A stretch of 63,865 bases of DNA from Glycera tridactyla (lineage: Eukaryota). Shown piece by piece: positions 27,492 to 28,574 of this stretch; the first letter of the stretch is position 1, and each line of letters starts with the position of its first letter. The notes beneath the pieces were generated by a model, which ran no database searches, had not been told where the DNA came from, and was given only the letters and a program-made list of their open reading frames with translations. Location of the stretch: positions 117,056,136 through 117,120,000 of the forward strand of contig OZ286462.1 in NCBI GenBank assembly GCA_965644265.1. The letters run 5' to 3'. The position numbers and the translations under genes are program-made.

Positions 27492-27635
27492 CTGGGTCAT
27501 TTCTGAGCTGATTTTCACACTCATTGGCAGAGCAGGATTCCAAAGTAAACTGTGGTAGGTAGAGTTCATGTTGGTGCATTTCAATTGGTGTGACCGAGTC
27601 CCACTGTAGTACCAAGTCCTTCATTGTATATGCAA
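27492..27635 (-). CDS. Cys-loop anion channel subunit, alternative exon 6a (loop B end, loops F and C)
   Basis: TTTTCCATTCCAG|...|GTAAGC, 144 nt, phase 1 to 1. Reads (F)AYTMKDLVLQWDSVTPIEMHQHELYLPQFTLESCSANECENQLRNDP(G). Confidence 0.88.
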
Positions 27636-28574
27636 CTGGAATGGAAAACTCACAATATGAAGGAGGTATCTCGACAAGACTGACTCAACATTTCAATTGG
27701 TGTGACCGAGTCCCACTGTAGTACCAAGTCCTTCATTGTATAAGCAACTGGAATGGAAAACACAATATGAAGCAGGTGTCTCGACAACACTGACTCAACA
27801 TTTCAATTGGTGTGACCGAGTTCCACTGTAGTACCAAGTCCTTCATTGTATATGCAACTGGAATGGAAAACTCACAATATGAAGGAGGTATCTCGACAAC
27901 ACTGACTCAACATTTCAATTGGTGTGACCGAGTCCCACTGTAGTACCAAGTCCTTCATTGTATAAGCAACTGGAATGGAAAACTCACAATATGAAGGAGG
28001 TGTCCCGACAACACTGACTCAACATTTCAATTGGTGTGACCGAGTCCCACTGTAGTACCAAGTCCTTCATTGTATATGCAACTGGAATGGAAAACTCACA
28101 ATATGAAGGAGGTGTCTCGACAACACTGACTCAACATTTCAATTGGTGTGACCGAGTCCCACTGTAGTACCAAGTCCTCTATTGTATAAGCAACTGGAAT
28201 GGAAAACTCACAATATGAAGGAGGTGTCTCGACAACACTGACTCAACATTTCAATTGGTGTGACCGAGTCCCACTGTAGTACCAAGTCCTTCATTGTATA
28301 AGCAACTGGAATGGAAAACTCACAATATGAAGGAGGTGTCTCGACAACACTGACTCAACATTTCAATTGGTGTGACCGAGTCCCACTGTAGTACCAAGTC
28401 CTTCATTGTATAAGCAACTGGAATGGAAAACTCACAATATGAAGGAGGTGTCTCGACAACACTGACTCAACATTTCAATTGGTGTGACCGAGTCCCACTG
28501 TAGTACCAAGTCCTTCATTGTATAAGCAACTGGAATGGAAAACTCACAATATAAAGGAGGTATCTCGACAACAC
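27577..28574 (-). repeat. 9-copy 112-bp tandem array made of the first 59 nt of exon 6a plus the upstream intron and acceptor
   Basis: Unit starts at 27577, 27689, 27799, 27911, 28023, 28135, 28247, 28359 and 28471 (one unit is 110 bp). Copies are nearly identical; copy 1 is the real exon start. Confidence 0.95.

What the first reader, a model, noticed from the sequence alone, without database searches (positions are those of the whole stretch)
27577..28574. Nine tandem copies of the exon-6a splice acceptor: eight decoy acceptors leading to a premature stop
Seen in sequence: each 112-bp unit holds the pyrimidine tract and CAG plus the first 59 nt of exon 6a. Acceptors sit at 27636, 27748, 27858, 27970, 28082, 28194, 28306, 28418 and 28530, and only 27636 continues into the true exon. 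Reading through from any upstream acceptor gives ...PIEMLSQCCRDTSFIL* within one unit. Inference: a VNTR that diverts exon-6a transcripts to nonsense-mediated decay would let copy number tune the 6a:6b ratio.
Basis: partly seen in the sequence, partly recalled or inferred. Interest (0 to 1): 0.82.

Follow-up and report, generated by a model that had tools for sequence, protein, structure and literature searches.

The report
Splice-acceptor minisatellite before receptor exon 6a
A 112-base piece spanning the end of an intron and the start of one alternative exon of a glycine-receptor-like channel gene is copied nine times in a row; this is a known kind of repeat ("mirage" minisatellite), and nothing I could test shows that the eight spare splice sites regulate anything.

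Summary
Window 27577-28574 is a 112-bp x 8.9 tandem array, 97% alike. Each unit holds 53 nt of intron 3' end plus the first 59 nt of exon 6a, so there are nine intact acceptors. The gene lies on the minus strand. It is a glycine-receptor-alpha-like anionic Cys-loop receptor with two mutually exclusive exon-6 copies, 6a and 6b.

The interpretation, a copy-number rheostat that diverts 6a transcripts to NMD, is untested. My single run search listed no sequencing run, so no reads could be laid.

Indirect evidence favours a young, unselected by-product:
- The same gene holds an older, decayed acceptor array before exon 4.
- The closest available relative has one exon 6 and no array there, but has a separate array on what looks like another splice junction.
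- Such junction-spanning minisatellites are described in amphioxus and human genes, where the spare sites are mostly silent.
- Earlier notes of this scan report many such arrays elsewhere in this genome.

If all acceptors compete independently for the exon-5 donor, copy number would lower total output and leave the 6a:6b ratio unchanged.

Verdict: new member of a known kind, of modest interest.

The parts
27577..28574 (-). 112-bp x 8.9 tandem array. Each unit is 53 nt of the 3' end of intron 5 plus the first 59 nt of exon 6a.
   Evidence: TRF. Unit table: 0-6 differences between units over 101 nt, and units 2 and 3 are identical.
27748..28530 (-). Eight decoy acceptors. The G of each AG lies at 28530, 28418, 28306, 28194, 28082, 27970, 27858 and 27748. 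Each is followed by 59 nt of exon-6a sequence and then an in-frame stop.
27492..27635 (-). Exon 6a, 144 nt (AYTMKDLVLQWDSVTPIEMHQHELYLPQFTLESCSANECENQLRNDP). The true acceptor AG is at 27637-27636 and the donor is CAG|GTAAGC.
   Evidence: It aligns to GlyR alpha-3 residues 161-190.
27296..27433 (-). Exon 6b, 138 nt (AYPETELLLEWEDQDAVDMDKKQLFLPQFNLESCSTTRCKESYKT). It is the alternative copy of exon 6 and lies 58 nt downstream of the 6a donor.
   Evidence: It aligns to GlyR alpha-1 residues 161-203, the same stretch as 6a.
30184..30266 (-). Exon 5, 83 nt, encoding the Cys loop (LDLKLSCPMKLTYFPMDYQICYVKISS). Its donor GCT|GTGAGT has to pick among the nine 6a-type acceptors and the 6b acceptor.
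   Evidence: Pfam PF02931. Sequence and coordinates.
21822..22092 (-). Exon 7, encoding the end of loop C and TM1-TM3. It is the common downstream partner of 6a and 6b.
   Evidence: Pfam PF02932. GlyR alpha E = 1e-33. Coordinates.
31532..31994 (-). Older, decayed tandem copies of the exon-4 acceptor junction in the same gene.
   Evidence: TRF (116 bp x 2.7, 78% alike). blastn: one copy keeps TTTGTAG|GACT, and two have lost the AG and the first ~20 exon nt.

Best explanation
This is a "mirage" minisatellite. A small tandem duplication straddled the intron-5/exon-6a junction and then expanded, probably by slippage or unequal exchange, to nine copies. It appears to be young or recently homogenised, specific to this lineage and not maintained by selection. 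Productive mRNA must use the acceptor at 27636, because it is the only one joined to the remaining 85 nt of exon 6a and its strong donor. Exon definition across that 144-nt exon is the most likely reason the right site is chosen. Any use of the eight upstream acceptors would give a stop codon and a lost transcript, which is a cost and not a control device. Shown here: the array, its junction-spanning unit, the nine intact acceptors, the stops, the gene identity and the exon map. Inferred: its origin, its neutrality and which acceptor is used.
For: Array and acceptors. Recurrence in the same gene: a second acceptor-junction array before exon 4 is only 78% alike and has lost the AG in two copies. 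A third array, 36191-36663, ends at a putative signal-peptide exon. Not conserved: the closest available relative (L001; exon 7 87%, exon 4 69% amino-acid identity) has a single exon 6 and no tandem repeat near it. That relative has its own 83-bp array starting 23 nt before the putative exon-8 donor. Youth: units differ at 0-6 of 101 positions, and the two changes private to decoy exon parts are both non-synonymous (MK to IE in unit 4, D to N in unit 7), so there is no sign of coding constraint on decoys. Literature: junction-spanning minisatellites are described in amphioxus Adh3, globin, troponin C and PGBD5 with normal mRNA (PMC3087553, PMC3902484). They are also described in human F7, LMNB2 and PDGF, where only the authentic site is used (PMC1557585). 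Earlier notes of this scan report many such arrays elsewhere in this genome. These notes are leads, not tested here.
Against: There is no RNA or read evidence for this locus. All nine acceptors are identical from -13 to -1, and the branch-point and exon-start context is nearly identical too, so nothing intrinsic disfavours the decoys. The decoys are transcribed first. Each decoy has a downstream GTGAGT at +94 (ATT|GTGAGT) that matches the consensus at least as well as the gene's own exon-5 donor GCT|GTGAGT, so pseudo-exons are conceivable. The published globin duplication experiments on acceptors gave contradictory results, as summarised in PMC1557585. Normal steady-state mRNA in the published cases would also be seen if NMD removed decoy products. 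In human IFI6 and CBS some pseudo-sites are used (PMC1557585).
Confidence: 0.6

Rival explanations
1. The upstream acceptors are really used, those transcripts carry a stop and are degraded, and copy number therefore sets how much 6a isoform is made relative to 6b. This could be adaptive or simply a polymorphism with an effect.
For: There are nine equivalent acceptors, each with its own pyrimidine tract and a likely branch site (TTCAT at about -23). Every decoy is followed by a stop. The decoys are transcribed before the true site. Some human junction minisatellites do use pseudo-sites (IFI6 and CBS, in PMC1557585).
Against: There is no conservation in the relative, and the sister array in the same gene has decayed. 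Published acceptor-type arrays, such as amphioxus BflGb6, give regular mRNA (PMC3087553). Under independent competition for the exon-5 donor the decoys also take from 6b, so the ratio would not change. This last point is my own inference.
Confidence: 0.2
2. Assembly artefact: the true copy number is lower, or simply different, and the array was inflated or mis-built by the assembler.
For: The window has several N runs. One published amphioxus array of this type was mis-assembled in a genome draft (PMC3087553).
Against: Units carry distinct substitutions shared between non-adjacent units (T at -33 in units 1, 7 and 9; A at +5 in units 5, 7 and 9) and one private 2-bp deletion. This looks like real repeat history and not like collapsed or duplicated reads. 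The array has no N inside it.
Confidence: 0.1
3. Recruitment array: the repeated 3' splice-site signals load U2AF/U2 locally and raise use of exon 6a over 6b. This is the opposite direction to the reader's model.
For: By analogy only. [quoted passage not shown] The array sits only in front of 6a.
Against: There is no data here, and the array is not conserved.
Confidence: 0.05
4. Exonisation: units are spliced in as 63-nt in-frame mini-exons (donor TGA|GTCAGT at the repeat junction, 49-nt introns), adding 21-residue repeats to the ligand-binding domain.
Against: The donor matches only 5 of 9 consensus positions and has C at +3. The 49-nt intron would be very short. The insertion would duplicate beta-strands inside a conserved fold. 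No protein with such repeats was found among proteins of 49-156 residues.
Confidence: 0.03

Closest known systems
Amphioxus "mirage" minisatellites (Adh3; globin BflGb6/BflGb9; troponin C; PGBD5)
   Same: They are tandem repeats whose unit spans an exon-intron boundary. BflGb6 is the same subtype: the 3' end of an intron plus the 5' part of the exon, units of 150-160 bp, 3-6 copies, 81-100% identity, with the authentic junction at the exon-proximal end (PMC3087553).
   Different: The lineage differs. The nearest named protein hits here are siboglinid annelids, which is only a weak taxonomic hint. Here the array sits in front of one of two mutually exclusive exons. Splicing and length polymorphism, both shown for amphioxus, are untested here.
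Human F7 intron-7 37-bp VNTR and similar arrays in IFI6 (6-16), CBS, LMNB2 and PDGF
   Same: The splice site is reiterated identically inside the intron by a polymorphic minisatellite. In F7, LMNB2 and PDGF the pseudo-sites are silent in normal mRNA (PMC1557585).
   Different: All of these are donor (5') arrays with the authentic site first. This one is an acceptor (3') array with the authentic site last, so the 5'-to-3' scanning rule shown for F7 does not predict the outcome here.
Poison-exon / alternative-splicing-coupled NMD regulation
   Same: Use of an alternative site would bring in a premature stop well upstream of later exon junctions.
   Different: Regulated poison exons are typically conserved and their use is shown in RNA. 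Here conservation was tested and not found, and use is untested.
Mutually exclusive exon pairs in Cys-loop receptor genes
   Same: Two tandem exon copies encode the same ligand-binding stretch. Earlier notes of this scan report similar pairs in another GlyR-like gene of this genome.
   Different: This is the setting of the array and not the array itself. A junction minisatellite attached to one member of such a pair did not turn up in my paper searches.

Membership tests
Mirage (junction-spanning) minisatellite | Head-to-tail repeat with a unit of minisatellite size (about 10-160 bp) | tested here: met
   112 bp x 8.9 copies, 97% alike
Mirage (junction-spanning) minisatellite | The unit spans an exon-intron boundary, and the authentic junction is the terminal copy next to the rest of the exon | tested here: met
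   The unit is 53 nt of intron plus 59 nt of exon, and only the copy at 27636 continues into exon 6a. The boundary is fixed by homology and phase.
Mirage (junction-spanning) minisatellite | The splice signal is reiterated intact in the copies | tested here: met
   Positions -13 to -1 are invariant in all nine copies
Mirage (junction-spanning) minisatellite | The spare sites are not used in mature mRNA | not testable with these tools
   No sequencing run was listed, and no transcript-derived protein of this species was found
Mirage (junction-spanning) minisatellite | Copy number varies between haplotypes or individuals | not testable with these tools
   No second assembly or reads of this species could be reached
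Regulated NMD-coupled alternative splicing (poison site) | The alternative site introduces a premature stop | tested here: met
   All eight decoys read into a stop within 13-22 codons after the duplicated exon part
Regulated NMD-coupled alternative splicing (poison site) | The element is conserved in related species | tested here: not met
   The relative L001 has exon 6 at 6730-6864 with no tandem repeat upstream. It is only one relative and a fairly distant one.
Regulated NMD-coupled alternative splicing (poison site) | The stop-carrying isoform is detected and is stabilised when NMD is blocked | not testable with these tools
   No RNA data
Glycine-receptor-like anionic Cys-loop receptor (host gene) | Neur_chan_LBD and Neur_chan_memb domains, a Cys loop, and the PAR motif before TM2 | tested here: met
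   PF02931 and PF02932. C-x13-C in exon 5 and VPARITLG in exon 7. The best solved match is GlyR alpha, E = 1e-33.

The most novel reading that the evidence does not exclude
The array is a heritable, fast-mutating dial on a neurotransmitter receptor. The choice between 6a and 6b is made first, and then the nine acceptors share the 6a-committed transcripts. Each added unit therefore lowers the 6a receptor form relative to 6b, giving individuals different ligand-binding-site mixtures by copy number alone.
Probability: 0.06. Interest if true: 0.75.

Novelty: new member of a known kind. Interest (0 to 1): 0.3.

Why it matters
As it stands, this is one more example of a repeat type already described in amphioxus and in a few human genes. 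It is apparently common in this genome, according to earlier unverified notes of this scan. Two things make it a little more useful than a routine example:
- It is an acceptor-side array. The rule for which of several identical sites wins is less settled for acceptors than for donors, so it is a natural test case for exon definition against first-come-first-served choice of 3' splice sites.
- It is attached to only one of two alternative exons that build the ligand-binding loops of a chloride-channel receptor. Any leak into the decoys would therefore be isoform-specific and would vary with copy number.

If such arrays really are common in a probable annelid as well as in amphioxus, the mutational process that seeds them at splice junctions deserves its own study.

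Tried and rejected
- **Reads.** The stretch was long and mostly intron, so RNA holders may have fallen under the word threshold.
- **Word search with the exon-6a ORF.** It returned no candidate. That search sees only proteins of 49-156 residues.
- **Word search with the TM1-3 exon.** The best hit was 85% identical and came from another species. Nothing from this species was found, so there was no transcript contig to fetch.
- **RNA structure that might mask decoys or mark the true site.** Folds of two-unit stretches gave z-scores of -0.46 and -0.24, no better than shuffled sequence. I dropped the idea.
- **Selection on the acceptor core.** No variant falls in -13 to -1. With about 13 variable columns in 101, roughly 1.7 hits would be expected there, so seeing zero has P of about 0.18 and is not informative.
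- **Enrichment of arrays at junctions within this gene.** Two arrays have homology-verified junctions and one has a putative junction, out of five arrays of period 40 or more. With a chance of roughly 0.12 per array, P is about 0.11 for two and about 0.015 for three. This is suggestive only.
- **Rfam scan of the window.** No match.
- **The original amphioxus Adh paper (PMC117041).** It is not held, so I cite it only through PMC3087553.

Full report
**What is there**

Tandem Repeats Finder reports a single array at window 27577-28574: period 112, 8.9 copies, 97% matches, no indels, score 1891. A 40-nt probe across the putative acceptor matches nine times, all on the minus strand, against none in 100 shuffles. 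Read on the minus strand, each unit is 53 nt ending in ...ttgtgagttttccattccag, followed by 59 nt that begin TTGC(T/A)TATACAATGAAGGAC. The G of each AG lies at 28530, 28418, 28306, 28194, 28082, 27970, 27858, 27748 and 27636.

**The host gene**

The minus strand carries a Cys-loop receptor gene.
- ORF pieces match Neur_chan_LBD (31100-31330, E = 4e-15; 30164-30376, E = 1.5e-8) and Neur_chan_memb (21821-22174, E = 7e-22).
- The TM1-TM3 exon is closest to glycine receptor alpha chains among solved structures (E = 1e-33). GluCl and GABA-A receptors come next.
- It has the VPAR motif of anion channels.
- I placed the exons by homology and splice consensus: exon 3 at 32862-32795, exon 4 at 31330-31110, exon 5 (Cys loop) at 30266-30184, exon 6a at 27635-27492, exon 6b at 27433-27296, exon 7 at 22092-21822 and exon 8 at 21239-21131. 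The last exon ends near 17413.
- Exon 5 ends with one base, T. T+TT gives Phe with 6a, and T+AT gives Tyr with 6b.
- 6a and 6b are 38% identical to each other and align to the same stretch of GlyR alpha, residues 161-203 (weak E-values because the queries are 45-47 residues).
- Only 58 nt separate 6a and 6b. They are therefore two versions of one exon, most likely used one at a time.

**The decoys**

All nine copies keep the pyrimidine tract and the AG. No variant falls between -13 and -1. With the phase set by exon 5, every upstream acceptor reads AYTMKDLVLQWDSVTPIEM and then runs into intron-derived sequence and a stop.
- Six decoys give LSQCCRDTSFIL*.
- The decoy at 27748 gives LSQSCRDTSFIL*.
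- The decoy at 27858 gives LSQCCRDTCFILCFPFQLLIQ*, because unit 8 has a 2-bp deletion.

Two donor-like sites lie inside each unit.
- TGA|GTCAGT sits at +63/+64. It matches 5 of 9 consensus positions and would define an in-frame 63-nt piece.
- ATT|GTGAGT sits at +94/+95. It matches 7 of 9 positions. It is lost in unit 8 through the deletion. The gene's own exon-5 donor, GCT|GTGAGT, matches only 6 of 9.
- The +94 site lies between the likely branch site and the pyrimidine tract of the next acceptor, only 18 nt before its AG. Complexes on the next 3' splice site would probably cover it. This is my inference.

**How old, and is it real?**

Units differ at 0-6 of 101 comparable positions, and units 2 and 3 are identical. 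Some variants are shared by non-adjacent units: T at -33 in units 1, 7 and 9, and A at +5 in units 5, 7 and 9. Together with a private 2-bp deletion, this looks like true repeat history with some two-unit steps and not like an assembler's product. I could not check copy number against reads. The two changes private to decoy exon parts are both non-synonymous, as expected if decoys are not translated. The numbers are too small for a test.

**Context in the same gene**

Upstream of exon 4 there are degenerate copies of the exon-4 acceptor junction at 31532-31994 (TRF: 116 bp x 2.7, 78% alike; blastn).
- One copy still reads ATTTGTAG|GACTCCCAAGTGGATGTGTACTT.
- Two copies have lost the AG and the first 20 or so exon bases.
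- About 200 nt of unrelated sequence now separates the array from the true acceptor.

A third array (36191-36663, 77 bp x 6, 73% alike) ends in what reads as the signal-peptide exon. There, every copy keeps CAG|ATT(G/C)AC. So this gene has acquired junction-spanning arrays more than once, and at least one has been left to decay.

**Comparison with a relative**

The best protein hit to the TM exon, at 85% identity, lies on a 2.8-Mb ENA contig of another species. The nearest named hits, at 58-61%, are siboglinid annelids. I fetched that locus as L001.
- It carries the same gene: exon 4 69%, exon 5 74% and exon 7 87% amino-acid identity.
- It has a single exon 6 of 138 nt. That exon starts with the Tyr split codon and ends ...SYKT like 6b, and it is about equally similar to 6a (48%) and 6b (47%).
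- No tandem repeat lies anywhere near its exon 6.
- It does have an 83-bp x 4 array that starts 23 nt before the putative exon-8 donor, GACGTG|GTACGT, and later copies keep the GT.

The array at exon 6a is therefore not conserved. If that exon-8 donor is real, the habit of making such arrays is shared by both genomes.

**What is known**

Tandem repeats that span an exon-intron boundary were named "mirages" in amphioxus Adh3. They were later found in amphioxus globin, troponin C and PGBD5 genes. The globin gene BflGb6 has exactly this subtype: the 3' end of an intron plus the 5' part of the exon, units of 150-160 bp, and 3 versus 6 copies on two haplotypes. RT-PCR showed regular splicing (PMC3087553; PMC3902484).

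Human F7, LMNB2 and PDGF carry donor-side versions in which only the authentic site is used. In IFI6 and CBS one or two pseudo-sites are used as well (PMC1557585). That paper also records that the early duplication experiments on globin splice sites gave contradictory results. The outcome for an acceptor array therefore cannot be predicted with confidence from the literature.

Earlier notes of this scan report many such arrays elsewhere in this genome. One follow-up there states that assembled transcripts use only the copy next to the real exon. I treat these as leads, since I did not test them.

**Reading**

The most economical account is a young junction-spanning minisatellite that arose by duplication and expansion and is tolerated. 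Productive splicing goes to the last acceptor because only that one is coupled to the rest of exon 6a and its strong donor, CAG|GTAAGC.

I cannot exclude that decoys are used and their products degraded. Steady-state mRNA would look normal in that case too.

The decoys and the 6b acceptor all compete for the one exon-5 donor. If the competition is independent, productive 6a and 6b both fall by the same factor as copies are added, and the ratio stays constant. Only a two-step choice, exon type first and acceptor second, makes the array act on the ratio.

**What failed**

- Two protein word searches found no product of this species.
- Folds of unit pairs were no more stable than shuffles.
- Rfam found nothing in the window.

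**Verdict**

This is a new member of a known kind, with interest of about 0.3.

Noticed in passing
window 31532-31994 (-): Decayed tandem copies of the exon-4 acceptor junction (116-bp unit, 78% alike). One copy keeps the AG and two have lost it together with about 20 exon bases. A spacer of about 200 bp now separates the array from the true acceptor at 31331/31330.
   Followed up: partly
window 36191-36663 (-): A 77-bp x 6 array that ends in a putative signal-peptide exon (MEQMSYTIPVLLPLICGFIHPGSAY..., donor GAAGAG|GTAAGT near 36083). Every copy keeps CAG|ATT(G/C)AC although the array is only 73% alike. That retention is more than uniform decay would leave.
   Followed up: partly
window 17842-18098 (-): A 64-bp x 4 array (97% alike) in the intron before the last (TM4) exon. 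Each unit reads TTTTTGAG + 38 nt. Only the last copy is followed by GT (AATTGG|GTAATT), so it may be a repeated micro-exon of the M3-M4 loop. This is unverified.
   Followed up: no
L001 10880-11221 (+): In the relative's copy of the gene, an 83-bp x 4 array starts 23 nt before the putative exon-8 donor (GACGTG|GTACGT), and later copies keep the GT. This would be a donor-side junction minisatellite at a different junction from the one in the window.
   Followed up: partly
L001 2774-2854 and 3107-3187 (+): The relative has two tandem copies of the Cys-loop exon 5 (LTLGLSCPMVLTHFPMDYQNCFLKISS and LTLSLSCPMVLTHFPMDYQRCALKISS) but only one exon 6. The window has one exon 5 and two exon 6 copies.
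   Followed up: partly
window 27434-27491 (-): The intron between the 6a donor and the 6b acceptor is only 58 nt. This may by itself prevent joining 6a to 6b, a steric way to enforce one-or-the-other use.
   Followed up: no
window 50479-51882 (+): A 467-residue ORF with a reverse-transcriptase domain (PF00078, E = 2.5e-34), so a retroelement copy lies upstream of the receptor gene.
   Followed up: no
window 19561-20205 and 7629-8322: Two further large-unit tandem repeats (321 bp x 2, 99% alike; 134 bp x 5.2, 89% alike). The first lies inside the receptor gene's M3-M4 loop introns. I did not examine either for exon junctions.
   Followed up: no
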